The notes beneath the pieces were generated by a model. It had not been told where the DNA came from. It did not search any database and worked only from the letters and a program-made list of their open reading frames with translations. This document shows positions 29,282 through 50,880 of a stretch of DNA of 64,000 nt, in pieces. Each line of letters starts with the position of its first letter. Position 1 is the stretch's first letter. Origin of the DNA: Schmidtea polychroa (lineage: Eukaryota); the NCBI GenBank assembly GCA_044892525.1, contig CM097885.1:20646001-20710000 (forward strand), read 5' to 3'. Position numbers and translations under genes: made by a program.

Positions 29282-29522
29282 GTAAAGAATAAGAATAATT
29301 GATAAATTCCAAAAACTTTATTTAAGAAATTGTGGTACTATTTATAGTACCCGGTGTGTCGACACCAACACAATCAGCAATAGCTTTTTGGGAAATAATA
29401 ATCAGTGATATAATTTGAGGACCCAGACAATCAAAAATGATAAATCACACATGCAGGCATTACATAATATAGGGTAAACGTTAGGGAAATCAAATATCTA
29501 TTATAATTACATCACAGATACC

Positions 29523-33987: not shown

Positions 33988-35257
33988 AGTAGAGAGAAGT
34001 GTGCTCCATGACTCATCGTTTTTTGTCATTTTTTTGCACACCCCCCCGATGACTCAGCGCAAAACAAAGACATATGACTCATCGATGACTCATCCATAGC
34101 AACAGCGGTAACTGGGTCAAGGTTATATGACTCATCCATAGCAACTGGGTCAAGGTCACATGACTCATCCATAACAACCGCGGTAACTAGGTCAAGGTCA
34201 TTCTATTTTTAGTAACTAGGCCAAGGTCATTCTATTTTTAGTAACAATGTCACGTGACGTCATCGATGACTCATCAAGGTCATTCTATTTTTAGTAACTA
34301 GGTCATGTGACGGCATCGATGACTCGTCAAGGTCATTCTATTTTTAGTAACAAGGTCATATGACTCATCATTTTTGGAACAAAGCCAACTGACTCATTAT
34401 TAAAGTATGTATGACTCATCATTTTTTAAACAAAGACATATTTAATATTTAAATAAATACATTTAAACAAATATTTAAATAAATACATTTAAACAAATAT
34501 TTAAATAAATACATTTAAACAAAAATTTAAATAAATACATTTAAACAAATATTTAAATAAATACATTTAAACAAATATTTAAACAAAGACATTTAATCAA
34601 ATATTTAAGTACATTTAAACAAAGACATATAGACAAAGACTCATCGATGACTCATAGTTTAGATAGGGGGTTTCTTTTTTTTTGCATACTCCCCCCCCTT
34701 GTATGACTCATCGATGACTTTTTTGAACAAAGACCAATCATTTATTTTTAAAAGAAAGACTCATCACACGACTCTAATTTTTAGAAGACTTCTTTTTTGG
34801 TAAACCAAAATTTATTGNNNNNNNNNNNNNNNNNNNNNNNNNNNNNNNNNNNNNNNNNNNNNNNNNNNNNNNNNNNNNNNNNNNNNNNNNNNNNNNNNNN
34901 NNNNNNNNNNNNNNNNNNNNNNNNNNNNNNNNNNNNNNNNNNNNNNNNNAAAAAGTTTGTTTTCATAAAATTTATTTCATAAATCATATAATTTGTTTTC
35001 ATAAAAACTGGTTTCATAAAAAAAAAAAAATAAAAATTAATCATAAAAAAATTTCATTATAAAAAAATTTAAATCATAAAAAAATAATAATTACCTCATT
35101 TGAAAAGATGTACAAAGTATCGATAACATCTAACCAATCAGAATTGGATATTATCGATGCTTTGTTTTCTGAATATGACTCATCGATGATTCATTGTTAC
35201 TAACTGAGTAATTTCTACTCACATAAAGACATGCAATACAAGTGCAATACAAGTGCA
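33988..35257 (+). repeat. Left terminal inverted repeat (>=1.27 kb; inner end lost in an N gap)
   Basis: Reverse complement of 49528-50659 apart from sub-repeat copy number. Confidence 0.95.
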
Positions 35258-35560
35258 NNNNNNNNNNNNNNNNNNNNNNNNNNNNNNNNNNNNNNNNNNN
35301 NNNNNNNNNNNNNNNNNNNNNNNNNNNNNNNNNNNNNNNNNNNNNNNNNNNNNNNNNNNNNNNNNNNNNNNNNNNNNNNNNNNNNNNNNNNNNNNNNNNN
35401 AATCAACAAAATATATTTAAATTACAAATTTACAATTTTACATTGTCATTTTTACAAATGTCTGTTGCATTGATTGTTTCTTACAATCTTGGCTTCATTG
35501 ACAACTATTAATAATAAAAAATAATAATTATAATAATAATTATTATTATTACCGAAATGA

Positions 35561-38500
35561 TCAGTAATCTTCTCCGTCAAAATTGTCGTCATCATCATAT
35601 ATAAAAGTGTCCCCTATCCGATAATGCCCATATGCCAAACTCTTGTTTTTCAATTTCCAATACCGCTTGTCATCTCTATTTGTCAGCGCCTTCTTAATGT
35701 TTTTTATGCTGTACAATTGATGATTTTTGGATGCAATGCGGAATTGTGGCACAGAGTAAACCTTATTGTTAAAATAACAATCACGATAGGAATTGTGATC
35801 TAAGCCAGTATCTTTCAACGTGACAGATTTTGCTTTAAGAGTTTCTTTATCACCTAATAAGCTGTAACACTTGGGACGAAGAAACACCCACTCCTTATAT
35901 CTCAATCCTTTATTCTCGTCTTTGAATTTTCCAATGACGGAATCTAGTGCTCTACTATATAAAGGATGTTGTGGGTTATAATTAGATGTGTCAAGCAAGG
36001 AGTCACGAATCATGGCAGGTAAGAGAATTTCAAGACTACAATTTTTAATTTCCAAAAAGAAAGAGTCTGTATCACTAGCTACTATATTAATTTCACAGTT
36101 AATCTCATCGCGATATTTTTGCAATTCATTATACTGCAACTGATACATTCTCAGTTTAGAAAGATCAAGTACAGTTTGCCCGATGTAGCTGGGCCTATCT
36201 AAACATACAGACTCTTTCATAAGCAAAACCGAAATCAAATCATCGTCTATCCTAGTAGATTTCTTAAATGCCGGTTTTGAGGCATATGTGATAAGTTTTT
36301 GTGCGGAATTGCACAGTCGTAAGTTAATACGTTTTTTCAAGTTCTCAACAGTTTTTCCATACAAACTGTTATTGAGCAACTTGTAATAGTCTTTATCGAG
36401 CGGTGTTATGGATGCGGCTCGTAGTTGTGTGTTGGTATCTATGTATTTCTTGAAGACAGTGCTTTGTGTATACCTAATAGCCCTATGTACCTTGGTAACA
36501 ACAACACCTAACTGAAGAAAGATTTGGAGAAGTCGCCAATGTAAAACATAGTGTGTTTTCGGATCGTGTGTAAGTAGCAACTTCTCCACTTTAGAAAAAG
36601 GTGGGCACATCTTACCAGGAGCTACCGGAAAATCATCTAGTTTGTCATGGATAGATTTCGGTATTTTTAAATCTACTTCTATAGTATAGCCATAATCAAG
36701 TTGATTTAAATCTTCCGTTGTGCACTCAATTAATAATCTCTCTAAAGCAATGTCATCAGTCACCCATTCAAAACCACCGTCGGGAAGCTTTTGTGATAAA
36801 GCCCATCCATACAGGTTGTTGATGTCAATATACAACAACTCTGTATTTTCATCACTACTAACAAAATGTTTATTCACAAACGTTATCCCACCTCTAATCC
36901 CACCTTCAAAGAAATTATACATTTCCATGTCGGTGAGAAGCTCAATCGGTTTATCAAGACTTAACAAAGTAGAACTCCAAGAAAGACTGGGGATACCTAG
37001 GAAATTCAAAGGCTCAAGCCTATTATGAGCAATACTCTTAGCTCGGAATTGCTGAAAAAAGTCAGCCAACAGAAATACATCTAATTTCAAATAGACCATC
37101 ATATAATCCAAAAGGGAATTACATGATGTCTCTTGCCAGATTAGTTTTGCTTTATTGTATTCATCATCGGATACATCACTCCATTTAGGGGGCAATTCTA
37201 ATGTAGAAATTAATACATCAAGGGAAGTTGCTACATCATAAGGGAAAATCCCTTTACTCTTAATAATAGGCCCTCTAAACTCAGATTCTGTCAAAGGTAA
37301 TGTGTTAAGGGTTGAGACAGCATTTTTCAAAGACGAATTTACAAACTGACAAGAATCTATAAATTTCACAGTCAGGGAATCAATATGCACAAAAAGAGAT
37401 AAAAATTTTTCACTTGTCACCGGTATACAAGAAATATGCCAGGACTTATATTTAGCCAAGCCAAATTTGAGGATATGATGGAGATCATACCCTCTCAAAT
37501 TATGAAAGACTACAGGTAGTGTGTGGTATATTTTCCTGGAAAGATTACAAGTGTTGCAAGCAGCACCAAGGAATTGACCGGTAAAGTGATCATGATCCCT
37601 GACTGGTTTAACTAATAATTTTTTACACAAATGACAGTTTGTGCTGTTATTAAAATTAATTTGGTCATTTTCTGTGAATATCATTTTCTTATTTTTATTT
37701 TTATAATAATAGGGAGTTACAATCTTTTTAGCGATATCATTAATTTCTTTTAAAAATTCGTCTATACAAGAAAGGCCTATGAATGATTTATAAAATTTTG
37801 CGCCTGTATTATTATTTATACATAAAAGTCCAGCCGAAATGGGTAAATGTTTCTGATAATATTTAGAATCTTTAGGAAGGATTGCCTCAAAATCGGCATA
37901 AATAACAAAAGGAGGAGTAATCATTTTACTATAGTCTGTGAATTCTAATAATGGATCTTTTGGTAGTGTGTACATTGTGGTTCCTAATTGGTTTCGTTCA
38001 CAAAGACCTTGATGTTTAATAAAACTATCTTCAAATCTGAATCCATTCAGACATCTAGGACACCACTTACAGTAAATACGAACAGAACTTATTGATGAAT
38101 TTCGGCAATTAAGAAAGATGTTTAAATCAGATATAGCGACGTAATGGTAGGTTTTCCGATTCTGTAATAATAACAAATTTAGACAAGTACCTCCTACTAT
38201 TTTACTGCGATAAATTATATCTATAAAAGGATGTTTCATGATGGGACCCGAAATTAACCCAGTTTCGTCATAACTTAAAACATTAATTGAATAACCTGGG
38301 TTTTGTCGTTCAAATTTTGAGATATTTGATAATTTCATTGGCATATCTGCCGGGTTATATATCAGATCTGAAAGGTTATAAGAACTAGGCAGATGACGCA
38401 ATTCATCAGGAGTACTATCATATTTTATAAGAGCCAAAACCGAGTAAAGGAAACAAAATTCGTCATCATTATTTACATTTATTATACATTTTTTCCTGAT

Positions 38501-39388
38501 TAATGTTTTCGGGGTTTCAATATATTTACGACCACTCAACCTACTAATCTTTGAATATTTTGTCACAATAAAACTAATGTATTCTATTTTGTTAATGGTT
38601 CAATTACTTCCCTTTTCATTTATTTTACTAATTTTTTCATTTAAAAGAGAGATACCATCATCAATAAATGTGTCGCTCCATACACGAGCAGAGTTTGAGA
38701 TTATGAAAGACTGAAATTCATCATTTTTCTCAAACTCTACTTTAATACAAAATTGAATTTTTACTGATTTCATTTTATTTACAATTTCTAACAATTTTTC
38801 TATGAGAACGTCAGGAACAGAAAGAATTTTACAATTCAAGGAAGATATATCCAACTTAACTATTACATGGGAACTATTCAGGTCGGAAACTACGTCGACT
38901 ATACCACTACCTACTTGGGGTACAACATCACTATTTTCAAATTCACTATTTTCAAATTCACTATTTTCAAATTCACTATTTATAACTTCACTATTTATAA
39001 CTTCACTATTTACAACTTCACTATTTACAACTTCATTACTTACAACATCATCGTCGTCTTCACTAATGACTATTATTTCTTTCATCTTTTTTGTGGGAAT
39101 TTCTGTGGGAATTTCTAAATGTCTTTTATTACCTATTATTCCTATTAATCTATTGACTGTTTCCATTAATTGTCGATTTTGTAAGTTTTCGGTGTTCCTA
39201 TTATTAGTTGATGATATATATTTTTGATACGCAATTTTGAAAACTGATTTTTTAGAAGGCATATATTGGGTTAAATGATTACGATGTTTATCATAAAATT
39301 CGGTATATGTCGATGTTTCAAGAGTTTGGCATGTAGGACATAACAAGTATGTTTCACTTTTATATTCATGACCATAATATTTTTCCAT
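35561..39388 (-). CDS. Protein-primed family B DNA polymerase (pPolB), ~1275 codons, one in-frame TGA at 38600-38602
   Basis: FADFE-like exo I (IYADFE); RDHDHFTGQFLGAACNTCN; VFHNLRGYD; YIDINNLYG; KLLNNSLYGK; SDTDS. ORFs 38600-39388 and 35561-38566 are in frame (GSN*TINKIEY). Confidence 0.95.
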
Positions 39389-40405
39389 AATATCGTCACA
39401 GTCATGATGTGTAGCACTGTTACAAAAGGTTGGATATTTATAACCTATAAAATAAGTAAAATAGTATTATTATCAAAATTATTATTATTATTATTATCAA
39501 AATTATTATTATTTATTATTACTATATAATCTGAGTTTATACGACAAAATATTCTGTCCCTCCCTTGCTCATAAGTGTATTATATTTAAATTTATTTTAA
39601 TTAAATAAAAACATATTCATTTTCTTTATAAAAATTAATTTCATTATTTGTTTCATAACAAAATTGACTTCATACATTTTCTTTATAACAAAATTGACTT
39701 CATATTAATTTAAAAAATCATAATAATTTAAAGTAAATTAATTTAAAAATCATAATAATTTAAAGCATATTAATTTTAAAATTTTAAAAAACCTACATTT
39801 AGGTTTCTTGCACGCGAGATTGTGTACAGCATTATTTACTAAAAAATCATAATAATAATAATAATTTAAAAATTAAATTTACCATAATTTCCGGAAACAT
39901 TATTTTCAATTCCATTACTTGCTGAAAAATTATAAGTTCCCGAAACACTATTTTCATTAATGTAGACTAAAATATAAATAAAAATAAAAACATATTAAAA
40001 AAAAAATTACCCATACGATTTCTTCGAATCATTTCCTTGATTTCATTTGAAATATTTTGCATTTTGAATAAATGAAAAAGAATTACAAAAACATAGATTA
40101 TATATGTAACGTTTATCCAATCAAAATGCAGATAGGATAGAAAAAATTAACGCACACATATTCATGTCTTTGTTTAAAAAAGAATGAGTCATCGATGACT
40201 CACATAGTAACAAATAATGTCTTTGTTACTCAAATAAAGACATGCAATACAAGTGCATGAAATTNNNNNNNNNNNNNNNNNNNNNNNNNNNNNNNNNNNN
40301 NNNNNNNNNNNNNNNNNNNNNNNNNNNNNNNNNNNNNNNNNNNNNNNNNNNNNNNNNNNNNNNNNNNNNNNNNNNNNNNNNNNNNNNNNNNNNNNNNNNN
40401 NNTTA

Positions 40406-40790
40406 TTAAACAAAATTATACATTGATAACAACCATGCAAGGCAATGTTGGCCACAAGTAATTGAAAATGGATTTTGATACCGAGTTCGATTATATACAA
40501 TAGGTTTACCAATAGTTTGCAATTTACTAATTAATAAATTTGGGTAATAATATCCAAAGGGATCGAATGCATATACTCGGTTTGGTTTCACATATACAGC
40601 AATCCAATGTTCACCTCCTAAACTAGATGTATGAGTATTGACGATTATGGCTTGATTATTTCTCAAATATGGAATTTTATCCAGTGGATAAACTCCAAGA
40701 AATTCGTTTCCCAATAATTGAGTACCAATTCGAGACACCTGAATAGAACTAATCAATAAGTTAAATTATAAAATAAAAATCTTACTCCAT
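40406..40790 (-). CDS. Adenain-like cysteine protease; probable exon 1 at 40786-40790 and a 37-nt intron at 40749-40785
   Basis: IVNTH..GGEHWIAV, FDPFG, and Q..SITCGQHC (His-Asp-Cys). Splicing GTAAG..TTAG gives the start MDSIQVSRIG. Confidence 0.88.
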
Positions 40791-40820
40791 AAAAAACTTT
40801 AATCTTTTAAATTTCTTCAT

Positions 40821-42047
40821 TTATACTAGTACAGTTCGATTTGCAGTAATTTGGATTTCATTTTCAAAAACCCCATAGATTATTACATGGACTGGTTCAG
40901 TAGTTGCTTTACCGAACTTAATATCCAATCTCAAATTGCCACTTTGAGGTAATTGACTTTGATTTAAATCAAAATCTGGAGCCAGAACAAATGTGAAAAA
41001 TGGATAGAATGTTTTGAATTCTTCCAGACTTATACCACAATTAAGATTTTTATCCAAATATCCTAAATTTCTGACAAGACTTTGTATATATGAAGTACAA
41101 TAATTATCATTATCAAAATCTTGAGTATAAGTTTCTCGATAATCAGTATTTTTCGATAATGAAAGAGAAGTTACACTAAAGTGTTTGAATTTTGATGAAG
41201 ATGTATCATAAGATCCGTTATATTGAGCTTCACTTTGAAAAGTTACAAGGATAAAATTAGGCATTCTTCGATCTCCAAATATTTGCTCCTTGTAAAAAGA
41301 TGATGCTCCTTTAGCAATTGCAAATGATACAATTTCTTTTGTTTTTATCGGATAAATTGCATGTTTGGTATTTAATCCAATTTGATGTCCCGCTAATACA
41401 AACGATTCACATCGAACTCTTCGAACCATTAATTTGGCATCGAGTAATATTAATTTAGGTGCTGCACCTGCAACTCCAGTTGATAATGACAATGCAGAAT
41501 CAGATCTTTTCAATCTCATATGTACATTAACACCTGGTAGTAAATATTTGGGTTGATCCATAAAATCCAATTGTAGAGATGAACACATGTTGAAAGTTTT
41601 TGAGCCTTTAATCCACTTTTTTCGATCATCAGATACACAATATCCCATTGGAGTTAGACAAGTATCTTTAGTATCATTATTATAATTTAAAATAGTTTCG
41701 ATAATTGCCTTGTGAGCATATGTATTGTTTCCACCCTCAATTTTAATGTTATTAAATCCAAGAATAACATCTTTAAAGAGAGTATGAAACAAGAAATTAT
41801 TAGGTTCAGTTGTATCATCTGCAGCTAATGCTTTATTGTCTTTATCTACAACTTTTATTTGAACATACAACAAAGTATCGTTCAAATCTAAATATTCTGT
41901 TTGAGAACCATTAATGTAAAATTCCACATCATTTCTACTATCGGTAATAGAATTCATTGGAAATACATCTTCAAATCCTCCATATTCGATAACCGCCTGA
42001 GGCGATGGTCGATCAAATAGACATAATTCAGATTTACCGCAAATCAT
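40821..42047 (-). CDS. Major capsid protein (Polinton PY, double jelly-roll)
   Basis: KSELCLFDRP..VEFYING..YLDLNDTLLY N-terminus; 408 aa; conserved position next to the protease. Confidence 0.85.
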   Translation of the reverse strand: MICGKSELCLFDRPSPQAVIEYGGFEDVFPMNSITDSRNDVEFYINGSQTEYLDLNDTLLYVQIKVVDKDNKALAADDTTEPNNFLFHTLFKDVILGFNNIKIEGGNNTYAHKAIIETILNYNNDTKDTCLTPMGYCVSDDRKKWIKGSKTFNMCSSLQLDFMDQPKYLLPGVNVHMRLKRSDSALSLSTGVAGAAPKLILLDAKLMVRRVRCESFVLAGHQIGLNTKHAIYPIKTKEIVSFAIAKGASSFYKEQIFGDRRMPNFILVTFQSEAQYNGSYDTSSSKFKHFSVTSLSLSKNTDYRETYTQDFDNDNYCTSYIQSLVRNLGYLDKNLNCGISLEEFKTFYPFFTFVLAPDFDLNQSQLPQSGNLRLDIKFGKATTEPVHVIIYGVFENEIQITANRTVLV

Positions 42048-42433
42048 TCTTCAAATATGGTTCCGTGTCCTTTCATTCGTTTGTTTATATGCCTTCTCCC
42101 TCTCTTGCGTTTAGTTCCCATACTTGTTTTAATTTCACTTTCAAATTTACGTTTTACTGGTACCAGTGCTGGTTCAGTTTTAAACATACCAGGTATTACT
42201 TTACTTATTTCAGCAATTGCATTTGATTTCAACGATGGTAATATTTTCTTGTCATTCATAATTACATCTTTTGCAGTTTTCATACCGAAATTACCAATAC
42301 GTTTAAGAATTGGTAACGCAAATCTACCAATTGTTCTCAACCACCCACTTCCGTACTGTTTACCAACAAAATATGGTAATTCGCCACCACTTTGGCTACC
42401 ACTATACATACTAATAATATCAGAATTAGCCAT
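42044..42433 (-). CDS. Small conserved Polinton basic virion-core-type protein (QxGxG motif)
   Basis: QSGGELPYFVGKQYGSGWLRTIGRFALPILK; K/R-rich tail; overlaps its neighbours. Confidence 0.7.
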   Translation of the reverse strand: MANSDIISMYSGSQSGGELPYFVGKQYGSGWLRTIGRFALPILKRIGNFGMKTAKDVIMNDKKILPSLKSNAIAEISKVIPGMFKTEPALVPVKRKFESEIKTSMGTKRKRGRRHINKRMKGHGTIFEE

Positions 42434-43472
42434 CTACTTTACGAAAATGTAGTGTCAAATGAGTTTTTGAATCTTTTGCAAATTCGATTAATTGACCAGA
42501 ATCATCTCTTATATTTATTTCTATATTGTTTATACAGGATGTTGAAACAGGCAAATACATGGGATTTTCTACATTGATTTGTACAACATCATCTTGTTCA
42601 TGTTTCTCAACCCAAATAGATTTCAATAGAGGAACCAAAGAATCACCAACAATTATGGGTTCAATAATATTAGTATAGAGAAACATTTGATGATGAAGTT
42701 TAATTATTTTCGGTTTATTCATACCTACATTTAATTTTCCATCTTGAATATATGTTCCTTTTGATAATCCTAATGTTTTTATTAGATTTTTATCAAAAGT
42801 AATTTCAGTAATATCAGTATTCAAACTGAATTTGAACAAAGTATTGTCTACTAATTCCAATGATTTAAATATTGATCCACAATTCTGAATTAAATATGAT
42901 TGTAATTCCTCCAATTTAGAAATGTATAAATTCTCATTAAACGTATATGTATTTTCAGTTTCACCCTCAAACTCAACTTTCATTGAAATTGTCTCATATC
43001 GCGCTGCTACTTTGGTAAATCTCGGCCGTAGTACTTGGAATATATTAGTATGATTTCTATTACTCTGACTTGTTAATTCCAATCGTTTTGCCATTGCTAA
43101 ACTATCAAATTTTATAGTAAAGGGATGATATTTACATTCAACTATTAAATATTGACGATCAATATACATTTTGACAATTGAATCGGAAGGACCAATATCA
43201 ATTCGATCTTCTACATTATCAATGACAAAAGAGATATTTCTTTGCGTCTCTTTCTTTTTATATTCAATTTTAGCTTTACTATAAATTGGAAAGAGATTGT
43301 ACACAAATGTAAAGTCAAGGAGAGCAACTTCCCAATTACCATTTAAATAAATCGGATTTTGGAGATTGACCATAAATTTACTGGCAGTGTTTTCTGGATG
43401 TATATTCGGACAACTATTACTTGGCAAAATAATGTAAAAATTCATTTTACGAGGTCTCGAGACGATATCCAT
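42426..43472 (-). CDS. Minor capsid/penton protein (Polinton PX)
   Basis: FYIILPSNS..PENTASKF..WEVAL at the N-end; LYTNIIEP..VGDSLVPLL..NPMYLPV..IEINIRDDSG..LTLHFRK at the C-end. Confidence 0.85.
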   Translation of the reverse strand: MDIVSRPRKMNFYIILPSNSCPNIHPENTASKFMVNLQNPIYLNGNWEVALLDFTFVYNLFPIYSKAKIEYKKKETQRNISFVIDNVEDRIDIGPSDSIVKMYIDRQYLIVECKYHPFTIKFDSLAMAKRLELTSQSNRNHTNIFQVLRPRFTKVAARYETISMKVEFEGETENTYTFNENLYISKLEELQSYLIQNCGSIFKSLELVDNTLFKFSLNTDITEITFDKNLIKTLGLSKGTYIQDGKLNVGMNKPKIIKLHHQMFLYTNIIEPIIVGDSLVPLLKSIWVEKHEQDDVVQINVENPMYLPVSTSCINNIEINIRDDSGQLIEFAKDSKTHLTLHFRKVDG

Positions 43473-44623
43473 GATGGGTTTTTATATCCATGCCATTTGA
43501 CATAGTATTGTTTATCCTTACCCACCATTTTAGTTTTCAATATTTTTTGAATTCTAAATACTTTTGGGGGAGGAATGACTTGTAATTCTTGCTCATAAAA
43601 TTTCCCTTGTACAATGTTATTTTCAGAATCTCTGATGACATACATCACAGGGTTCTGGCTAGTATTTATTTTCGAAATTACAAAGACTTCATCACTCCAA
43701 TTTGTATCGAAATTTTTAATAAATGGTGATGCACTAATTTTACTAATTCTAACATGGTCACCAACTTTATATTTCGGTTTTGTAATTTTTTCAGATTTTT
43801 TAGAATAGAATGTTTTTGATGTGATATCAACCGGTCTCAATCCATTAAGTCCTCGATGTGACTAGTTATAACTGGTTATAATTTTTGGTAAAACCAATAC
43901 CCATTTTTTATTACCTTGATACACGAACAATTTCTTTAATCTATCTCTCAAGGTTCTGTTAAATCTTTCAACATGAGCAGCTTTGTATTGAGAATGTACC
44001 GAGTAGTGATTTATTTTCAGTTTATCGAGGATTTGCTTAACTTTACTGTTNNNNNNNNNNNNNNNNNNNNNNNNNNNNNNNNNNNNNNNNNNNNNNNNNN
44101 NNNNNNNNNNNNNNNNNNNNNNNNNNNNNNNNNNNNNNNNNNNNNNNNNNNNNNNNNNNNNNNNNNNNNNNNNNNNNNNNNNNNNNNNNNNNNNNNNNNN
44201 NNNNNNNNNNNNNNNNNNNNNNNNNNNNNNNNNNNNNNNNNNNNNNNNNNNNNTATTAGGATGTCCATTTTTAAATAAAATATTAATAGCTTTGGACATT
44301 TCATCTGCAGATTTTGACTTGACTGGTATTGCTCGTGCAAACCTGCTGTATACATTAATACACGTTAAAATATATTTATACCCCTTGTTAATTTTTGAAT
44401 AGGGTATCATCTCCATCAAATCCATTTGCCACAAATCATTTATTCCATATGTTTTATACGCTCTTGTTGGAAATCTTTTCTGCATTGGTTTGTTCAAACT
44501 GTACGCTAGTTGATTTGATAACCACTTCTGGGTTTCTTTTTTCGAATTCGGAACTCTTTTCATTAATTTTGCCACTCCACCGAAACCGGCTTCGTCTTCT
44601 GGGTTCGTCCAAATCTTCTCCAT
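43442..44623 (-). CDS. Retroviral-type (RVE) integrase with C-terminal chromodomain; one in-frame TAG at 43862-43864; part hidden by an N gap
   Basis: LWQMDLMEM, KAAHVERFNRTL, YKVGDHVRISK and YYVKWHGY; the two ORFs are in frame. Confidence 0.92.
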
Positions 44624-44678
44624 TACAACAGGAAGATTTAAAATTCAAATTAAGATTTGGTAATGATTGACCCATTGT

Positions 44679-45170
44679 TTATGATGATGATTTTAATAAA
44701 CCTGCCCCTCCCAATAAAGATAATGCTATTGGTATCAAGGCTGCAATGAAGCCTCCTTGTTGTTTATATATGATTTTACGCATACGTTTTTTATTTCTAG
44801 TATTTACTAATGATAATAATGGTTTCTTGTGTCTGTTCAAAATCTTTTTATTTGATGTACTTATACGGAATTTACCTTTAACAACTTTAATTAAAATAGC
44901 AAGTAAATCATCAATAACATAATTTGGAAAAGACTGTAAAATATTCATTCTTCTCATACTGGGAGCCTTAAGTAATGCAATGAAAAACGGAAAACTACGA
45001 TGAGAATTACTCGGCGGAATATGATTACTCGGTGGAATACGATTACTCGGCGGAATATTATCAATAAGCAATTTTTTTGATGGTGTGAAACTAGTTTTTG
45101 GTGGAATCTTAACCACTTTTGCAGGTTTCCTTCTTGTAGGTTTTGTCTTTACACGAGTTTTTAGTAACAT
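44679..45170 (-). CDS. Basic protein ending in a GGFIAALIPIALSLLGG amphipathic segment (resembles adenovirus pX-type/Polinton core proteins)
   Basis: K/R-rich body with IPPSN repeats; C-terminal QQGGFIAALIPIALSLLGGAG after a protease-like GG site. Confidence 0.7.
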   Translation of the reverse strand: MLLKTRVKTKPTRRKPAKVVKIPPKTSFTPSKKLLIDNIPPSNRIPPSNHIPPSNSHRSFPFFIALLKAPSMRRMNILQSFPNYVIDDLLAILIKVVKGKFRISTSNKKILNRHKKPLLSLVNTRNKKRMRKIIYKQQGGFIAALIPIALSLLGGAGLLKSSS

Positions 45171-45191
45171 GATTGATAATTTATTTTGGTT

Positions 45192-45815
45192 TTATCTTTG
45201 TTTATATACTATAGCTCCTTCCTTGTTAAATATATCTGTTCTTACTCGTAATTCATCAGGACACTGTTGTGTAAAATCTAGAAAAATATATCCATGTGGG
45301 GATTTTGTTGCATCGACAAATGCATTCATTAAGAAATTTCGATTATTTGGATATGCTTGCCTTGCAAGAAAGTCAATCACTGTAGCATCTCTCGGATTTT
45401 TGAAAACAACTAAATATTGAACATTCAAATTACGAGTTCGGTGAGATCCACCTTGATGAAAAAGATTTTGAGTGATAAAAATTACAGTGACACCTTTATG
45501 TCTACTAATTTTTGTAAACAAATTATTAAAATCCTTTTCTTTATTTGCTTCTTGATATAAATCATCAATAATAATCACATCACCCTGTCGTAATCTAGAT
45601 GACCAGTTTTTATCGAACCCTTTTATGATTGTCATTTTGATTTTACAAAACTGATCTTGTGTCATTCCGCTTTCATCATCAGCTCCCCTATGCCAATAAA
45701 TTTTATTAAATTTTGACTTGAATAATTTTGATTGTAATAATTTACAAACAAACAATGTTTTCCCGCTACCACTCGGGCCAACGATTTGGTATACTGCATC
45801 ATTTCTTAATTGCAT
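45192..45815 (-). CDS. A32/FtsK-type genome packaging ATPase
   Basis: Walker A GPSGSGKT; Walker B IIIDD; ISRH; FITQN. Confidence 0.93.
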   Translation of the reverse strand: MQLRNDAVYQIVGPSGSGKTLFVCKLLQSKLFKSKFNKIYWHRGADDESGMTQDQFCKIKMTIIKGFDKNWSSRLRQGDVIIIDDLYQEANKEKDFNNLFTKISRHKGVTVIFITQNLFHQGGSHRTRNLNVQYLVVFKNPRDATVIDFLARQAYPNNRNFLMNAFVDATKSPHGYIFLDFTQQCPDELRVRTDIFNKEGAIVYKQR

Positions 45816-45923
45816 TTTTTATTTTTAATTTTAAAATATCTAGTTATTGTTTATATTAGATGATTTTAATGAACTCTTGCTAAAGTTGTATATAAAGAGT
45901 AAAATTTCATAAATGATTTAATT

Positions 45924-46361
45924 ATGCTTGCAAATATAAATTATCGAGGAAATTTTGATGTTTCAAAAATGAGGTTCCCACTAGGAAAACCACAGCAAAT
46001 TGTCGATAGAAGCGGGAAATATCCGATAATATTTTTCAAGACTGGCAAATGCAGAATTATGGGATGTAAGGAACCATTGGATATTAATAAATTACAATAT
46101 CGAATCAATAATATTAAAATTCAATCAATTACCGTTACTATGGATATGGGACATACTATCAATTTATACAAAATATCGAGAAAATGTGATTGTATGTTTG
46201 AACCGGAATTGTTTCCGGCATTAAGACTATTAAAATATAACCCTATATGTGTCAATGTGTTTTCAAGTGGAAAGGTTGTCATGCTTGGGTTGAGAAATTT
46301 AGACTATAGGGAATTTGTTAACAATGTTCGGAATGAGTTAAATTCATTGGTCGATTTCTAA
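45924..46361 (+). CDS. TATA-binding protein (TBP)-like protein, 145 aa
   Basis: Two TBP half-repeats: IIFFKTGKCRIMGCK, and FEPELFPAL..VNVFSSGKVVMLG. Confidence 0.8.
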   Translation: MLANINYRGNFDVSKMRFPLGKPQQIVDRSGKYPIIFFKTGKCRIMGCKEPLDINKLQYRINNIKIQSITVTMDMGHTINLYKISRKCDCMFEPELFPALRLLKYNPICVNVFSSGKVVMLGLRNLDYREFVNNVRNELNSLVDF

Positions 46362-46450
46362 TTGGTTAATTTCTAATTGGTTAATAATAATAATATTAAC
46401 TGTTTATTGTTTAGATGTCATTAATAATGTATACTAGCGCGGCAAAATCA

Positions 46451-46824
46451 ATGTCTGAGATCGATAATTACGGTAAATTTTTAATTTATATATATTTTTT
46501 ATATATTTTATAGATGAATATTCCAAAGTGATGTTAAATTGCCTCAAGTATTTCTATCCTCAATTGAATGAAATTCTGAAGGACAGGGATCCAGAGATTA
46601 TACCAGATTTGGTATACAATGCAACAAGAATCTGGATGTTCGATATATTAAATCAATTCCAATGGGATATCAAGATCGACAGAATGCAGAAAGAAATGGA
46701 ACCAGAATATCCATGTATCATTGGATGCAGTTGTTGTGCTGATCGTTATCAGCGATATGTAGAATGGAATTTAGTAAAAACACTTAGAAGATATTACTAT
46801 TCTAGGATTGTTGATTTAAATTAA
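46451..46824 (+). CDS. Unknown small protein, two exons (46451-46472, 46514-46824)
   Basis: A 41-nt GT..AG intron joins MSEIDNY to DEYSKVML in frame; CIIGCSCC motif. Confidence 0.6.
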
Positions 46825-46876
46825 TAAATATTTTTTATGTATTTTGTTTTTTTTTTTTTATATATTGATGACCAAA

Positions 46877-46917
<41 letters not shown>

Positions 46918-47141
46918 TAATAATAATAATAATCATACATGTGCAACATTAATGCAATTTAAACAAAGACACATTAATGCAAACCATGTGCAACATTGAT
47001 GCAATTTAAACAAAGACATGTGCAATACAAATGCAAAGCATGTGCAACATTGATGTAATTTAAACTTTAATCTGATTGGTTGTTCCATTTATTTTGAAGG
47101 TATAAAAACCCTGTACCATTTCATTTTAATCATAATTCACG

Positions 47142-47549
47142 ATGGTCAAGAAAAGCACTGAAAAACCGAAAGATGAACTTGTTCAGCCTGTTCAAATGTT
47201 CCACAACTACAAAATGTATTTTTTAAAAGAAGAAATCAATATGAAATTGGTTGCACCGGTCAAGTTAATTCCAACTCAATTTCAATTCTTATCCGGCACG
47301 CTTTCAATGGTAGATGTTAAAACCATAGATGATGTTTTCAAACGGTTGAATTCAAATCTATCATGTAATCAAAATGCATGGTTCAACAACCGATATGCAA
47401 AATTTTATGATGCCTTTGATGAAATCAGTTTCAAAGAAAACGAAAATTGGTATATAACAATTGCAATCCAAGGATATAAAGTCGATAATAATGATGTGTA
47501 TTCTCCAATTTGGAAAATTATGTCTGCTAGGCTTTCACAACTATTTTAA
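47142..47549 (+). CDS. Unknown 135 aa protein, possibly an OB-fold ssDNA-binding protein
   Basis: Intact ORF with upstream CCAAT and TATA boxes. The beta-rich aromatic C-terminus (YITIAIQGYKV..YSPIWKI) suggests an SSB; this is inference only. Confidence 0.55.
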   Translation: MVKKSTEKPKDELVQPVQMFHNYKMYFLKEEINMKLVAPVKLIPTQFQFLSGTLSMVDVKTIDDVFKRLNSNLSCNQNAWFNNRYAKFYDAFDEISFKENENWYITIAIQGYKVDNNDVYSPIWKIMSARLSQLF

Positions 47550-47701
47550 TGTATTTAATAAATGTATATAATGTATTTTAATAAATGTATTTAATGTATT
47601 TAATCTTATTTATTTTATTAATATTAATGCAACAGTAATGCAAATTTAACAAAGACATTCTATAAACAAACTTACATTATAGTTTAAAAGTGTTAATAAA
47701 A

Positions 47702-48130
47702 ATGACTACAGAAAAAGGTTAATTTTGATTAATAACTTACCGAATTATTTATTATTTAGAAATTGTAATCAACTTTTTGTTGGAAAAATTGGCAGAAATA
47801 GCTGGTGTAAATGTTGAGGATATATTATCTGTTGCAAATGCATTAAATATAGGCTGGATAGTTGAAAGTCAAGATTCAGGATTTGATGAAAGTGAAGTGA
47901 GTCAAGAAACTGATGTAGAAATTGATGGAGAAAATGATGGAGAAAACACCCAAGAAATTAGTGAAAACACCCAAGAAATTAGTGAAAACATCCAAGAAAT
48001 TGATGGAGAAAACATCCAAGAAATTGATGGAGAAAACAATCAAGAACAACCTAACGATTGTATAGATCATGTAGTTGATAATATTATGAAATGTGGAGAT
48101 GACTATTGTGAATGTGTTAATAAATGTTAA
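47702..48130 (+). CDS. Acidic repeat protein, two exons (47702-47717, 47760-48130)
   Basis: A 42-nt intron joins MTTEK to EIVINFLLEK in frame; ENTQEIS/ENIQEIDG repeats; C-terminal CGDDYCEC. Confidence 0.6.
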
Positions 48131-48172
48131 ATTTTAAATTTTGTTTTTTATACATAAGAAAAATAACAAAAA

Positions 48173-48362
48173 TTAATATTTATTTAAATATTTAAATAAC
48201 ATATACAATAAAACAACTCCTGTTGTGAGTTTAATATAGTTTTTCATTTTTCTTTTGATTTCATCAGTTTCTTTAGCATTGCGGGCGAGTTGATTGAGTA
48301 TATCCCATCCGCCATTATCTTCTATCCATGGACTAAACTTGGATTTGATTATCTAAAAAAAA

Positions 48363-48402
<40 letters not shown>

Positions 48403-48703
48403 TTACTTCTAAAGACCACTGATAATAATGTTCTGAGTCATGTTGGCATTTCGCAATGATTATCTTCATGTAGGTGAACCCTACAATAATTCTTGTCCAT
48501 TTCATGTCTTCATCGCAGAGACATTGAAATATATTGTTAAAATAATTCTTCTTTGATTCAAGACAATCCATATCAAGCATTCTCTGGTAGTCGATATGGT
48601 TGCCTTCAATAATTTGTTCGGTCCGATTGACCAGGAAATTGAGGCTGTCGACTATATTCGCTGTGACTAGTCCATTTAGAACGTTTTCAATAAATTTAGA
48701 CAT
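48173..48703 (-). CDS. Bcl-2 family protein, two exons (48407-48703, 48173-48352), 158 aa
   Basis: BH1-like LCDEDMKWTRIIVGFTY in exon 1. After a 54-nt GT-AG intron, exon 2 encodes BH2 SPWIEDNGGWDIL and a C-terminal TM tail YIKLTTGVVLLYMLFKYLNKY. Confidence 0.88.
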
Positions 48704-48812
48704 TTTTTACAATAATTTTTAATATACTGTCTTATTTATACTACTGTGTGTGTAATATGATTCTGATTGGTTGATAGACTATAAATGTAAAACATAATAG
48801 ATTTGATACAAC

Positions 48813-49313
48813 ATGAAAACTATATTTCTATTGCTAATTATTATAAGGAGTGTGTGCTCACACAATACGACAATAACGGTGGAGTCTTTTAATAAATCAA
48901 TATGTATTTGTCCAAATACCGCCAAGTTGATGGATATTTTATATATTCTTGACAAACCAAAATGGGCAAAGCATCCAGGAAAAAGAATATCCCAAAGATT
49001 GGAGAATTTAGAAAACAGCTATGACCTATCTTTTGAATATATACAAAATATAAAATTTAAATTGATTGATCATATTGAGGTTTTCAATAACTCAATTGTT
49101 GAAAATAAAAAGAATATGAAAATTATTGATAAGAAACATGAACATTTGTTAAGAAAGATTGATTTAATAATATTCGAAATTCGAACAATAAAAGAATCGA
49201 TAGAAAATTTGAAAACCAATTCAACGTTACCAATTTCAAACAAGATGGCAGCAAATATGAGTACATCAATATTTAAATGGCCATTGTTAATTTTAAATTA
49301 TTTCATTGTTTAA
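48813..49313 (+). CDS. Putative secreted or GPI-anchored coiled-coil glycoprotein, 166 aa
   Basis: Signal MKTIFLLLIIIRSVCS; five NxS/T sequons; hydrophobic C-tail IFKWPLLILNYFIV; upstream GATTGG and TATAAA. Confidence 0.65.
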   Translation: MKTIFLLLIIIRSVCSHNTTITVESFNKSICICPNTAKLMDILYILDKPKWAKHPGKRISQRLENLENSYDLSFEYIQNIKFKLIDHIEVFNNSIVENKKNMKIIDKKHEHLLRKIDLIIFEIRTIKESIENLKTNSTLPISNKMAANMSTSIFKWPLLILNYFIV

Positions 49314-49527
49314 TAAATGTATTGATTTAAATTATCTTTTGTCTGATATATTATTATTATTATTGGCATAAATATTATTAATTTAATTATTATTATNNNN
49401 NNNNNNNNNNNNNNNNNNNNNNNNNNNNNNNNNNNNNNNNNNNNNNNNNNNNNNNNNNNNNNNNNNNNNNNNNNNNNNNNNNNNNNNNNNNNNNNNNNNN
49501 NNNNNNNNNNNNNNNNNNNNNNNNNNN

Positions 49528-50659
49528 ATGCACTTGTATTGCATGTCTTTATGTGAGTAGAAATTACTCAGTTAGTAACAATGACTCATCGATGAGTCAT
49601 ATTCAGAGAACAAAGCATCGATAATATCCAATTCTGATTGGTTAGATGTTATCGATACTTTGTACATCTTTTCAAATGAGGTAATTATTATTTTTTTATG
49701 ATTTAAATTTTTTTATAATGAAATTTTTTTATGATTAATTTTTATTTTTTTTTTATGAAACCATTTTTATGAAAACAAATTATATGATTTATGAAATAAA
49801 TTTTATGAAAACAAACTTTTTNNNNNNNNNNNNNNNNNNNNNNNNNNNNNNNNNNNNNNNNNNNNNNNNNNNNNNNNNNNNNNNNNNNNNNNNNNNNNNN
49901 NNNNNNNNNNNNNNNNNNNNNNNNNNNNNNNNNNNNNNNNNNNNNNNNNNNNNNNNNNNNNNNNNNNTTTGGTTTACCAAAAAAGAAGTCTTCTAAAAAT
50001 TAGAGTCGTGTGATGAGTCTTTCTTTTAAAAATAAATGATTGGTCTTTGTTCAAAAAAGTCATCGATGAGTCATACAAGGGGGGGGGAGTATGCAAAAAA
50101 AAAGAAACCCCCTATCTATATGTCTTTGTCTATATGTCTTTGTTTAAATGTACTTAAATATTTGATTAAATGTCTTTGTTTAAATATTTGTTTAAATGTA
50201 TTTATTTAAATATTTGTTTAAATGTATTTATTTAAATTTTTGTTTAAATGTATTTATTTAAATATTTGTTTAAATGTATTTATTTAAATATTTGTTTAAA
50301 TGTATTTATTTAAATATTAAATATGTCTTTGTTTAAAAAATGATGAGTCATACATACTTTAATAATGAGTCAGTTGGCTTTGTTCCAAAAATGATGAGTC
50401 ATATGACCTTGTTACTAAAAATAGAATGACCTTGACCTAGTTACTAAAAATAGAATGACCTTGACCTAGTTACCGTGGTTACCACGGTTGCTATGGATGA
50501 GTCATATAACCTTGACCCAGTTACCGCTGTTGCTATGGATGAGTCATCGATGAGTCATCGATGAGTCATATGTCTTTGTTTTGCGCTGAGTCATCGGGGG
50601 GGGGGTAGTGCAAAAAAATGACAAAAAACGATGAGTCATGGAGCACACTTCTCTCTACT
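49528..50659 (-). repeat. Right terminal inverted repeat (>=1.13 kb)
   Basis: Near-identical reverse complement of the left TIR, with an internal N gap at the equivalent position. Confidence 0.95.
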
Positions 50660-50880
50660 TGTTGCAGTTTATAGGGATGAAAGCTTTCGGTTTTGATGAT
50701 ATGTAGCATGGTGGTTCTTGCGACACCGAGCTCACTTGACGATCGTCGCAATGATTTCACTGGACTGTTCTCAACCTTTTCGATGATGCGTAATCGGGTT
50801 TTGTCAGACACTCTTGGAGGGCCACTTCGTTGTTTGTCTAGGACACTGCTAGTTTCACGAAATTTATTTATCTGAAAATC
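50660..50880 (-). pseudogene. Tc1/mariner transposase N-terminal fragment split by the Maverick; the remainder is at ~33945-33987
   Basis: The minus strand reads KFRETSSVLDKQRSGPPR..SLRRSSSELGVARTTM..FHPYKLQQ. Removing the Maverick continues it as LNNLYEDDPDR, matching the HPYKxQxxxxLxxDDxxxR pattern. Confidence 0.75.

What the first reader, a model, noticed from the sequence alone, without database searches (positions are those of the whole stretch)
48173..48703. Maverick encodes a spliced, intact Bcl-2 homologue hidden from the ORF track
Seen: the 116 aa ORF ends in microsatellite-derived poly-Leu. Splicing at GAA|GTAAAT..TTTTAG|ATA (54 nt) adds SPWIEDNGGWDIL and a TM tail. Established: WIxxNGGW is the BH2 signature, and BH1+BH2+C-terminal TM is the Bcl-2 architecture that adenoviruses, herpesviruses and poxviruses use to block apoptosis. 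Inference: a viral Bcl-2 inside the TIRs implies this polintovirus-like element actively counters host cell death. I do not recall this as a standard Maverick gene.
Basis: partly seen in the sequence, partly recalled or inferred. Interest (0 to 1): 0.88.

Follow-up and report, generated by a model that had tools for sequence, protein, structure and literature searches.

The report
Spliced Bcl-2 gene in a Maverick
A virus-like Maverick transposon in this AT-rich animal genome carries an intact two-exon gene for a small Bcl-2-family (cell-death regulator) protein. This kind of accessory gene has already been noted in related animal "adintoviruses", so it is a good new example rather than a new kind of thing.

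Summary
On the minus strand, exon 1 (48703-48407, 99 codons) is followed by a 54-nt GTAAAT...T-run-TAG intron (48406-48353). Exon 2 (48352-48173) encodes a BH2 motif and a short basic-flanked hydrophobic tail.

Each exon on its own matches only the Bcl-2 family, and the two matches are collinear. A 97%-identical relative has the same intron at 38 nt, so its exon 2 is in frame only if spliced.

The joined 158-aa product aligns across the junction with a Pfam-confirmed Bcl-2 gene from sibling elements (E 3.8e-7). Exon 1 shows dN/dS of 0.10 against an 84%-identical relative.

The gene lies inside a 16.7-kb Maverick (33988-50659) with roughly 1.3-1.4-kb TIRs and a 6-bp target-site duplication.

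Limits:
- No structure could be obtained.
- Splicing and expression are unconfirmed.
- The BH1 glycine is replaced.
- This copy's polymerase and integrase each carry one in-frame stop.
- A pro-survival role is inferred by analogy only.

Bcl2 and IAP homologues in animal adintoviruses were reported in 2021, so this is a new member of a known kind. The extra interest is a second, unrelated Bcl-2 gene type in sibling elements that keeps the cellular GGW intron.

The parts
48407..48703 (-). Exon 1 of the Bcl-2-like gene (ATG to GAA, 99 codons). It covers the N-terminal helices and the BH1-like region.
   Evidence: Translation. Pfam Bcl-2 profile positions 6-70, E 3.5e-4. Profile against PDB: 21 of 25 weak hits are Bak or Bax at BH1. 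AF2 of this piece gives five helices, at low confidence.
48464..48520 (-). BH1-like segment (about aa 62-80). Trp and Arg of the W-G-R core are kept and the Gly is replaced by Thr. The most hydrophobic internal helix follows it.
   Evidence: Alignments to Bax and Bak. MAFFT column match to the sibling's ...SWGR.... Hydropathy peak at aa 70-86.
48353..48406 (-). 54-nt phase-0 intron: GTAAAT donor, (ATT)n microsatellite, T-run, TAG acceptor. Its AG is part of the stop codon that ends the 116-aa ORF.
   Evidence: Sequence. Relative L001 has the same donor and acceptor but a 38-nt intron, so its exon 2 is in frame only after removal. It is the only strong frame-keeping GT..AG pair.
48173..48352 (-). 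Exon 2 (59 codons plus TAA): BH2 motif, charged linker and C-terminal hydrophobic tail.
   Evidence: Translation. 94 PDB chains at E <= 10, the 60 listed all Bcl-xL or Bcl-2 (or fusions), best 4qnq_A at E 0.006, with the alignment running into the TM tail. Pfam Bcl-2 profile positions 86-100.
48305..48328 (-). BH2 core (W-x-x-x-N-G-G-W).
   Evidence: Residue-by-residue alignment to Bcl-xL.
48185..48235 (-). Tail-anchor-like segment: a 12-residue hydrophobic core flanked by Lys/Arg.
   Evidence: Kyte-Doolittle 12-residue window scores 2.10 at aa 141-152, with 5 basic residues before and 2 after. Aligned to the Bcl-xL TM region.
48733..48740 (-). TATAAATA box 30-37 nt upstream of the ATG, also present in relative L002.
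48766..48770 (-). CCAAT box in the short divergent intergenic region, also present in L002.
   Evidence: The intergenic region is 85 of 112 columns identical to L002.
48179..48184 (-). AATAAA polyadenylation-type signal overlapping the last codons.
   Evidence: Read directly.
33988..50659 (.). The whole Maverick/Polinton-type element (16,672 nt), holding six runs of N that were left untouched.
   Evidence: TIR arms, termini and TSD, N runs.
33988..35400 (+). Left terminal inverted repeat, with internal short tandem repeats and two N runs.
   Evidence: segments 95-100% complementary to the right arm.
49397..50659 (-). Right terminal inverted repeat.
33982..33987 (+). Target-site duplication TGTTGC, left copy. 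The right copy is at 50660-50665.
   Evidence: Read.
35561..39388 (-). [quoted passage not shown] In this copy it is broken by one in-frame stop, with no frameshift.
   Evidence: A single same-frame tblastn HSP with the continuous sibling ORF of L013 spans it. It is 60% identical to the L004 polymerase, whose product has PF03175 on record.
40821..42047 (-). 408-aa ORF conserved in all siblings (54-65% identity). Presumed capsid-module protein; its family was not established.
   Evidence: No Pfam, PHROG or PDB sequence hit.
42426..43472 (-). 348-aa conserved ORF of the morphogenetic block, with three paralogous ORFs in L004. Family not established.
43442..44623 (-). Retrovirus-like integrase (rve core plus chromodomain). 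As given, it carries one in-frame stop and one 203-nt N run.
   Evidence: Pfam rve and Chromo hits. Two same-frame HSPs with sibling integrases. N run.
45192..45815 (-). A32/FtsK-type packaging ATPase, intact.
   Evidence: Pfam Pox_A32, 28.6 bits against a cutoff of 22.8. 491 relatives.
45924..46361 (+). Element-encoded TATA-binding-protein-like gene, conserved in siblings.
   Evidence: Pfam TBP, E 3e-16. Siblings.
48813..49313 (+). 166-aa ORF transcribed divergently from the Bcl-2-like gene. By eye it has a signal-peptide-like N-terminus, a coiled-coil-like middle and a hydrophobic C-terminus. The same neighbour is present in L002.
   Evidence: only weak coiled-coil-type Pfam hits; 91% identity to L002.

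Best explanation
The locus is a two-exon accessory gene of an endogenous Maverick/Polinton (adintovirus-like) element. [quoted passage not shown]

Shown here: the gene anatomy, the homology, the shared intron, the position inside the element, and selective constraint.

Inferred: the protein is inserted by its tail into the mitochondrial outer membrane or the ER. [quoted passage not shown] A cell in which the element's DNA is replicating and being packaged would then not undergo mitochondrial apoptosis.

The host is probably a planarian flatworm, also an inference. In that lineage a Bak/Bcl-2/cytochrome c pathway is reported, so such a protein would have a target.
For: Anatomy.

Homology:
- Pfam Bcl-2 hits are collinear on the two exons: 21.5 bits on profile positions 6-70 and 12.3 bits on 86-100. 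A rough sum of 33.8 exceeds the 31.4 cutoff.
- Exon 2 alone finds 94 PDB chains at E <= 10; the 60 listed are all Bcl-xL, Bcl-2 or fusions of them, best E 0.006.
- The exon 1 profile gives 21 Bak/Bax chains among 25 weak hits.
- The joined product against the spliced sibling Bcl-2 gives one HSP across the junction: 33.5 bits, E 3.8e-7. Exon 1 alone gives 21.6 bits and exon 2 alone 23.5. Shuffles give a mean of 13.8 and a maximum of 21.2.
- hhalign probability is 86.7%.
- The sibling protein passes the Pfam threshold (40.6 bits) and hits Bcl-xL at 7e-5.

Splicing: relative L001 has the same GTAAAT...TAG intron but 38 nt long, so its exon 2 is in frame only when spliced. In L002 the ORF also closes 3 codons after the same position.

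Constraint: exon 1 against L002 gives dS 0.80, dN 0.08 and dN/dS 0.10, Fisher p 1.6e-11.

Element: TIRs, a 6-bp TSD, polymerase, integrase and ATPase.

Precedent: Bcl2 and IAP homologues in adintoviruses (PMC8502044).

Host pathway: Bak and Bcl-2 homologues underlie cytochrome c release in S. mediterranea and Dugesia (PMC8998228).
Against: - No confident structure: AF2 of exon 1 alone gave pLDDT 50 and uninformative fold hits. The full spliced protein could not be passed to the structure tools because it has no reference.
- Each exon alone is below the Pfam gathering score.
- The Gly of the BH1 W-G-R core is a Thr in all three relatives.
- No BH3 or BH4 motif was recognised.
- The hydrophobic tail core is only 12 residues.
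- No spliced 158-aa product was found in the protein collections, which include assemblies of sequencing runs. The source genome's own ORFs are also not on record there.
- This copy's polymerase and integrase each carry an in-frame stop.
- Polintons are piRNA-silenced in planarian stem cells (PMC8532177), so this particular copy may be silent.
- The window differs from near-identical L001 by 6 non-synonymous and 1 synonymous change, which looks like relaxed constraint among recent copies.
- The direction of action (pro-survival or pro-death) is not decided by any result here.
Confidence: 0.6

Rival explanations
1. It is a genuine Bcl-2-fold protein of the element but not a pro-survival one. 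It might act like Bak or Bax to permeabilise mitochondria and release particles late. Alternatively it might use the fold for something other than apoptosis, such as autophagy, calcium or innate-signalling control.
For: The exon 1 profile's best PDB matches are Bak and Bax rather than Bcl-xL. The BH1 Gly is replaced by Thr in all relatives. The N-terminus is short and has no recognisable BH4.
Against: Those Bak/Bax matches are weak (E 0.14-1.4). BH2 and the tail match Bcl-xL and Bcl-2 best. The adintovirus Bcl2 homologues are described in the literature as homologues of anti-apoptotic proteins (PMC8502044).
Confidence: 0.2
2. In this genome the gene is only a relic. The copy is a dead, silenced insertion, and the open frame reflects its youth rather than any present function.
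For: One in-frame stop each in polymerase and integrase. 6 non-synonymous and 1 synonymous difference to the 97% copy L001. TIRs 95-100% identical by segment, which indicates a recent insertion. piRNA silencing of Polintons in planarians.
Against: This concerns the copy, not the gene family. dN/dS of 0.10 over dS 0.80 shows the gene was kept by selection through most of its history. The splice sites, TATA box and AATAAA signal are all intact here.
Confidence: 0.12
3. The gene is not spliced. The product is the 116-aa ORF, a truncated BH1-only protein with a poly-Leu tail that could itself act as a membrane anchor.
For: The ORF is open and ends in a hydrophobic run. The 54-nt stretch is a multiple of three.
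Against: The read-through tail is not conserved: it is different in L001 and only 3 residues in L002. Exon 2 is conserved (4 codon differences in 49), carries BH2, and in L001 is reachable only by splicing. The joined protein aligns to a sibling Bcl-2 across the junction.
Confidence: 0.05
4. The resemblance is chance in AT-rich, low-complexity sequence and there is no gene.
For: Each single hit is sub-threshold.
Against: Two independent adjacent pieces hit the same family in collinear order on the same strand. There are conserved relatives with dN/dS of 0.10. The alignment score lies about 10 sd above shuffles.
Confidence: 0.02

Closest known systems
Bcl2 homologues of adintoviruses (animal Maverick/Polinton-type viruses), Starrett et al. 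2021, PMC8502044
   Same: An accessory gene of the Bcl-2 family carried by an animal element that has a protein-primed PolB, a retrovirus-like integrase and a packaging ATPase. Those authors also note IAP, TRAF and TBP-like accessory genes, which match what is seen here and in the siblings.
   Different: The paper mentions them in one sentence and in supplementary maps, which were not available here. It reports no gene structure, so the intron, the flatworm-like host context and the two unrelated gene types in sibling elements are not described there as far as I could read.
[quoted passage not shown]
   Same: BH1-like segment, near-identical BH2 core, charged linker and C-terminal hydrophobic tail in the same order.
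   Different: - Only 158 aa, with no long loop and no recognisable BH4 or BH3.
- The BH1 Gly is replaced by Thr.
- The coding intron is not at the conserved GGW boundary (PMC8998228) but 16 codons upstream of it.
- The gene sits inside a mobile element.
Second Bcl-2 gene type in sibling elements (P0124; loci L004-L007)
   Same: Same element family: ATPase 72% identical, same core gene order. It is a small two-exon Bcl-2-family gene with a GTAAAT donor, a 41-nt intron and a TM tail on the last exon.
   Different: - Only 25% identical over 88 aa.
- It sits between the ATPase and TBP genes rather than at the far end next to the TIR, and in the opposite relative orientation.
- It has the W-G-R core (SWGR) in BH1.
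- Its intron is exactly at the cellular BH2 boundary.
This points to a separate acquisition or a very old split.
   Same: The same logic: a virus-borne Bcl-2-fold protein, often tail-anchored, that keeps the infected cell alive.
   Different: None of them came back as a hit in any search here, so no direct relationship is shown. This gene is carried by an integrated 16.7-kb element.
BCL2-like motif of the planarian giant Gypsy element Burro (Arkhipova & Yushenova 2019, PMC6431247, citing Grohme et al. 2018)
   Same: A mobile element of the probable host lineage that carries cell-death-related domains (BIR, TRAF/MATH, BCL2-like). A Burro-like element with IN+ankyrin, TRAF-MATH and BIR-RING ORFs lies in this same window at 1-10957.
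   Different: That motif is a domain inside a retrotransposon polyprotein, not a free-standing tail-anchored gene. No similarity to the Maverick gene was found anywhere else in the window.

Membership tests
Bcl-2 family (Pfam PF00452) | Domain score at or above the curated threshold (31.4 bits) | tested here: inconclusive
   The tools take only the pieces. Exon 1 scores 21.5 bits (profile positions 6-70) and exon 2 scores 12.3 bits (positions 86-100), collinear, for a rough sum of 33.8. The joined protein could not be scanned because it has no reference.
Bcl-2 family (Pfam PF00452) | BH1 motif with the W-G-R core at the start of the central hydrophobic helix | tested here: inconclusive
   W and R are present, but G is replaced by T in the window, P0001 and P0002. 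The hydrophobic helix follows.
Bcl-2 family (Pfam PF00452) | BH2 motif (W...N-G-G-W) | tested here: met
   Aligned residue by residue to Bcl-xL. 94 PDB chains at E <= 10, the 60 listed all Bcl-xL or Bcl-2.
Bcl-2 family (Pfam PF00452) | C-terminal tail anchor | tested here: met
   A 12-residue hydrophobic core (KD 2.10) flanked by 5 and 2 basic residues. The alignment to full-length Bcl-xL runs through its TM. The core is short, so membrane insertion itself remains an inference.
Bcl-2 family (Pfam PF00452) | Eight-helix globular fold around a central hairpin | tested here: inconclusive
   AF2 of exon 1 alone gives five helices but pLDDT 50, and Foldseek finds nothing significant. The sibling P0124 gives pLDDT 44.
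Bcl-2 family (Pfam PF00452) | Conserved coding-exon boundary at the GGW of BH2 (PMC8998228) | tested here: not met
   The window gene reads straight through GGW, and its only intron lies 16 codons upstream. The sibling type has the canonical boundary. This is a gene-structure trait, not a requirement for the protein family.
Bcl-2 family (Pfam PF00452) | BH3 and BH4 motifs | not tested
   No tool result bears on them. None is evident by eye in exon 1.
Maverick / Polinton (adintovirus-like element) | [quoted passage not shown] | tested here: met
   60% identity to the L004 polymerase and 50% to that of L013; PF03175 is on record for the L004, L005 and L008 products. The window ORF's own Pfam scan did not list PF03175. 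One in-frame stop in this copy.
Maverick / Polinton (adintovirus-like element) | Retrovirus-like (rve) integrase | tested here: met
   Pfam rve and Chromo hits, both below their Pfam cutoffs. 65-73% identity to sibling integrases. One in-frame stop and one N run in this copy.
Maverick / Polinton (adintovirus-like element) | Long terminal inverted repeats and a 5-6-bp target-site duplication | tested here: met
   Arms of roughly 1.3-1.4 kb, 95-100% complementary by segment. TGTTGC on both flanks.
Maverick / Polinton (adintovirus-like element) | A32/FtsK-type packaging ATPase | tested here: met
   Pox_A32 at 28.6 bits against a 22.8 cutoff.
Maverick / Polinton (adintovirus-like element) | Double and single jelly-roll capsid proteins and an adenain-type protease | tested here: inconclusive
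   Conserved ORFs of 408, 348, 129 and 163 aa lie in the expected block and are shared with all siblings. No family or PDB hit was found.

The most novel reading that the evidence does not exclude
Closely related flatworm Mavericks have acquired Bcl-2-family genes at least twice. One type still carries the cellular GGW-boundary intron, which points to capture of a genomic host gene. The window's type has a different position, orientation and intron. Both were kept under purifying selection. Together with element-borne TBP, TRAF/MATH and ubiquitin-conjugating genes in siblings, this would mean these 'transposons' are or recently were replicating viruses with a fast-turning host-manipulation module aimed at the Bak/Bcl-2 pathway of a stem-cell-driven animal.
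Probability: 0.3. Interest if true: 0.6.

Novelty: new member of a known kind. Interest (0 to 1): 0.45.

Why it matters
Whether Mavericks are merely transposons or still behave as viruses is an open question. Host-manipulation genes kept under selection argue for a viral life style. Here a cell-death regulator is carried inside the TIRs, is spliced by the host machinery, and shows dN/dS of 0.10. A second, unrelated Bcl-2 gene sits in sibling elements.

This gives a concrete, checkable case of recurrent capture of apoptosis regulators by polintovirus-like elements, probably in an animal with a mammal-like Bak/Bcl-2 pathway.

It is also a practical warning. Such genes are invisible to ORF-only or prokaryote-style gene calling, because the BH2 and TM exon has no start codon.

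Tried and rejected
- **Structure.** AF2 of exon 1 with its 3-sequence alignment gave pLDDT 50, and Foldseek against PDB gave no hit below E 3.6. AF2 of the sibling P0124 alone gave pLDDT 44 and was not searched. The joined 158-aa product has no reference and was not typed, so it was never sent to Pfam, PDB or AF2. It was analysed only in local scripts.
- **Exact look-ups.** Look-ups of three window proteins found nothing, so the source genome is not in that collection.
- **Search for more relatives of the gene.** The word-index search gave 2 hits. The exhaustive HMMER search gave the same cluster plus one repetitive false hit, P0003. IMG/VR and JGI scans gave none.
- **ATPase-based scans.** IMG/VR found nothing. 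The JGI scan gave 80 loci, none with either Bcl-2 type.
- **MAFFT of the exons with P0124.** Exon 2 was misplaced, so alignment A3 was not used.
- **Test for a Burro-type Bcl-2-like domain.** The 532-aa ORF at 7403-9001 gave only a faint Poxv_Bcl-2-like hit (E 0.1) and nothing in PDB, so the idea was dropped.
- **Other checks.** Rfam found nothing in the window. TATAAATA is not a general promoter mark of the element's genes. One literature query was too broad and useless, and another on planarian Bcl-2 also led nowhere.
- **Host identity.** It could not be tested directly. It rests on the Burro-like neighbour and on base composition.

Full report
**1. The observation**

The gene lies on the minus strand. 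The 116-aa ORF (48703..48353) runs from an ATG into an (ATT)n microsatellite, which it reads as poly-Leu/Phe before a TAG. Exon 1 as proposed is 48703-48407 (99 codons, ending GAA). The next bases are GTAAAT. Fifty-four bases later a T-run ends in TAG, and the following frame (48352-48173) stays open for 59 codons to a TAA. That frame reads ...SPWIEDNGGWDIL..., then a charged stretch, then a hydrophobic end.

Joined as they stand, the two exons give 158 aa without an internal stop. Only four GT..AG pairs in the area keep the frame, and the proposed pair is the only one with a good donor and a pyrimidine-rich acceptor. Exon 2 has no early start codon, so the ORF list cannot show it.

A TATAAATA box lies 30-37 nt before the ATG, a CCAAT box lies further upstream, and an AATAAA overlaps the last codons.

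**2. Is it a Bcl-2 homologue?**

- Exon 1 hits Pfam Bcl-2 (PF00452) and nothing else: profile positions 6-70, E 3.5e-4, 21.5 bits.
- Exon 2 hits the same model at positions 86-100 (12.3 bits), so the two matches are collinear. Their rough sum of 33.8 bits is above the 31.4-bit cutoff, while each piece is below it.
- Against PDB sequences, exon 2 alone returns 94 chains at E <= 10. All 60 listed are Bcl-xL, Bcl-2 or fusions of them. The best (4qnq_A, E 0.006) aligns through BH2 and on into the transmembrane tail.
- Exon 1 alone finds only Bax (E 0.72). Its three-sequence profile finds 21 Bak/Bax chains among 25 weak hits. All align at the BH1 region, where those proteins read N-W-G-R and this one reads K-W-T-R.

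**3. Is it spliced?**

Two relatives exist, both short ENA metagenome contigs of about 1x coverage.

L001 is 97% identical. It has the same GTAAAT donor and T-run TAG acceptor, but its intron is 38 nt instead of 54 nt. The unspliced frame therefore stops at once, and exon 2 is in frame only after the 38 nt are removed. Exon 2 is nevertheless conserved, with 4 codon differences in 49. This is an intron shared by a relative, so I joined the exons as they stand, in local scripts only.

L002 is 84% identical. Its ORF closes three codons after the same ...QWSLE position, and the contig ends there, so its exon 2 is unseen. It does carry the same divergent upstream neighbour as the window (91% identity) and the same TATA and CCAAT boxes.

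**4. A second test of the splice model**

Sibling elements found through the packaging ATPase (L004-L007, about 16-kb contigs from 24 or more samples) carry a 125-aa ORF with a Pfam Bcl-2 hit on record. I confirmed that hit at 40.6 bits, and the ORF matches Bcl-xL at 7e-5 in PDB.

That gene has its own 41-nt GTAAAT...TAG intron directly after the second Trp codon of BH2, followed by a 41-codon exon with a hydrophobic tail. This is exactly the boundary reported as conserved in cellular pro-survival Bcl-2 genes (PMC8998228).

Local BLASTP of the window's joined protein against this spliced sibling gives one HSP, aa 46-129, running across the 99/100 junction: 33.5 bits, E 3.8e-7.
- Exon 1 alone gives 21.6 bits.
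- Exon 2 alone gives 23.5 bits.
- 200 shuffles give 13.8 +/- 2.0 bits, maximum 21.2.

hhalign gives a probability of 86.7%. An HMM of the window family picks out the L004-L007 Bcl-2 ORFs as its only hits besides its own family, among all six-frame ORFs of 95 loci.

**5. Selection**

For exon 1 of the window against L002, dS is 0.80, dN is 0.08 and dN/dS is 0.10. There are 26 synonymous changes on 53 sites and 18 non-synonymous changes on 238 sites (Fisher p 1.6e-11). The gene was therefore maintained by selection for most of the time separating these lineages. Between the window and the near-identical L001 there are 6 non-synonymous and 1 synonymous difference. The numbers are small but fit relaxed constraint among recent genomic copies.

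**6. The element**

Inverted repeats of roughly 1.3-1.4 kb (segments 95-100% complementary) bound 33988-50659. The termini are flanked by a 6-bp duplication, TGTTGC.

Inside lie:
- a protein-primed PolB gene, 60% identical to sibling ORFs that have PF03175 on record;
- a block of conserved ORFs of 408, 129, 348 and 163 aa with no family hit;
- an rve+chromo integrase;
- an A32-type ATPase;
- a TBP-like gene;
- several small unique ORFs;
- the Bcl-2-like gene, about 0.7 kb inside the right TIR.

Compared with continuous sibling ORFs, the polymerase and the integrase of this copy each carry one in-frame stop and no detectable frameshift. The integrase also holds one of the six N runs in the element, which I left as they are. 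So this copy is young but probably not autonomous.

**7. Distribution**

The window type of Bcl-2 gene occurs only in L001 and L002. The second type occurs only in L004-L007. The other sibling loci that reach the accessory region have neither. They carry TRAF/MATH (L008) or a ubiquitin-conjugating enzyme gene (L013) instead, while the TBP-like gene is widely kept.

The two Bcl-2 types differ in four ways: position, orientation relative to TBP, intron site, and sequence (25% identity). That points to two acquisitions or a very old split. Many loci are short, so absence is only weakly informative.

**8. Host**

Window 1-10957 holds ORFs with integrase+ankyrin, TRAF-zinc-finger+MATH and BIR+RING domains. 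This matches the unusual domain set described for the giant Gypsy element Burro of planarians (PMC6431247). Together with about 30% G+C, I infer a planarian-like flatworm host. This was not tested directly.

Literature relevant if the inference is right:
- Mavericks are abundant in Dugesia and Schmidtea.
- Polintons are SMEDWI-2 piRNA targets that are derepressed on knockdown and during differentiation (PMC8532177).
- Bak and Bcl-2 homologues underlie cytochrome c release in these worms (PMC8998228).

**9. Mechanism**

Shown: anatomy, homology, shared intron, constraint and location.

Inferred: the tail inserts the protein in the mitochondrial outer membrane or the ER. The protein then acts as a pro-survival Bcl-2 during replication of the element.

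Points against a simple reading:
- the replaced BH1 glycine;
- the weak Bak/Bax-like flavour of exon 1;
- the short (12-residue) hydrophobic core;
- the lack of any transcript or structural evidence.

**10. Comparison and novelty**

Starrett et al. [quoted passage not shown] A later preprint says most mammal-associated adintoviruses encode homologues of anti-apoptotic genes.

What appears new is the spliced gene structure, the flatworm-type context, and the coexistence of two unrelated Bcl-2 gene types in sibling elements, one of which keeps the cellular intron.

**11. What failed**

Both structure predictions were of low confidence and the fold search was uninformative. The spliced protein could not be given to Pfam, PDB or AF2 because it has no reference and I did not type it.

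**12. Slips, for the record**

- Early in my own reasoning I wrote from memory two short Bcl-2 motif strings (4 and 11 letters) of cellular proteins.
- My first notebook entry lists ORF bounds exactly as the ORF tool gave them, before I recognised that two ORF pairs are halves of single genes. Those bounds imply where the two stops lie.
- The sequence list holds these ORF ranges too.
- The script takes in the same ORF bounds and prints them again.

Noticed in passing
window 1-10957 (+): A strongly A-rich run of long ORFs: integrase (H2C2+rve) fused to ankyrin repeats, a TRAF zinc-finger+MATH ORF (4577-6001), a BIR+RING IAP-like ORF (6142-7320), and several large ORFs without hits. The domain set resembles the planarian giant Gypsy element Burro. 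A second mobile element with cell-death and ubiquitin-related genes therefore lies 23 kb from the Maverick.
   Followed up: partly
L004 3408-3940 (-), and the same gene in L005-L007: A second, unrelated Bcl-2-family gene in sibling elements, between the ATPase and TBP genes. BH1 has the W-G-R core (SWGR). A 41-nt intron sits exactly at the BH2 boundary conserved in cellular genes, and the TM tail is on the second exon.
   Followed up: yes
window 45924-46361 (+): The element encodes its own TATA-binding-protein-like protein (Pfam TBP, E 3e-16). It is conserved at 47-57% in most sibling loci, which makes it a near-core gene of this clade.
   Followed up: partly
window 48813-49313 (+); L002 1-303 (-): A 166-aa ORF transcribed divergently from the Bcl-2-like gene. 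It has a signal-peptide-like start, N-x-S/T sites, a coiled-coil-like middle and a hydrophobic C-terminus, so it is a possible membrane or envelope-type protein. The gene pair is kept together in L002.
   Followed up: no
L008 7923-8912; L013 222-719: Sibling elements carry other host-interaction genes in the same variable region: MATH/TRAF in L008 and a ubiquitin-conjugating enzyme (UQ_con) in L013.
   Followed up: no
window 50660-50811 (-) and left flank near 33900-33987: The Maverick appears to have inserted into another repeat. The flank encodes a helix-turn-helix-like N-terminus that, by eye, looks typical of mariner-type transposases.
   Followed up: no
window 34818-34949, 35258-35400, 40265-40402, 44051-44253, 49397-49527, 49822-49967, 51268-51544: Seven runs of N. 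Four sit at mirrored positions in the two TIRs, one is inside the integrase gene and one is in the gap between the 408-aa ORF and the polymerase. They were left untouched and limit what can be said about the integrase.
   Followed up: no
L004 6353-9377: L004-L007 have three consecutive ORFs (332, 345 and 329 aa) where the window and L009 have one (348 aa). At least two of them match the window ORF at 31-34%, which indicates duplication in the morphogenetic block.
   Followed up: no
L001 499-516: The last 18 nt of L001 diverge completely from the window inside the hydrophobic tail. This is either a chimeric contig end or a copy with a different 3' end.
   Followed up: no
window 19609-24609 and 26484-30109: ABC-transporter ATPase exons (host gene or pseudogene), and a gag (zinc-knuckle) plus reverse-transcriptase retroelement, lie upstream of the Maverick.
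   Followed up: no
window 47777-48130 (+): A 117-aa ORF convergent with the Bcl-2-like gene, with 42 nt between the two stop codons. It has acidic tandem repeats and a Cys-rich C-terminus, and no relative was found in any locus.
   Followed up: no
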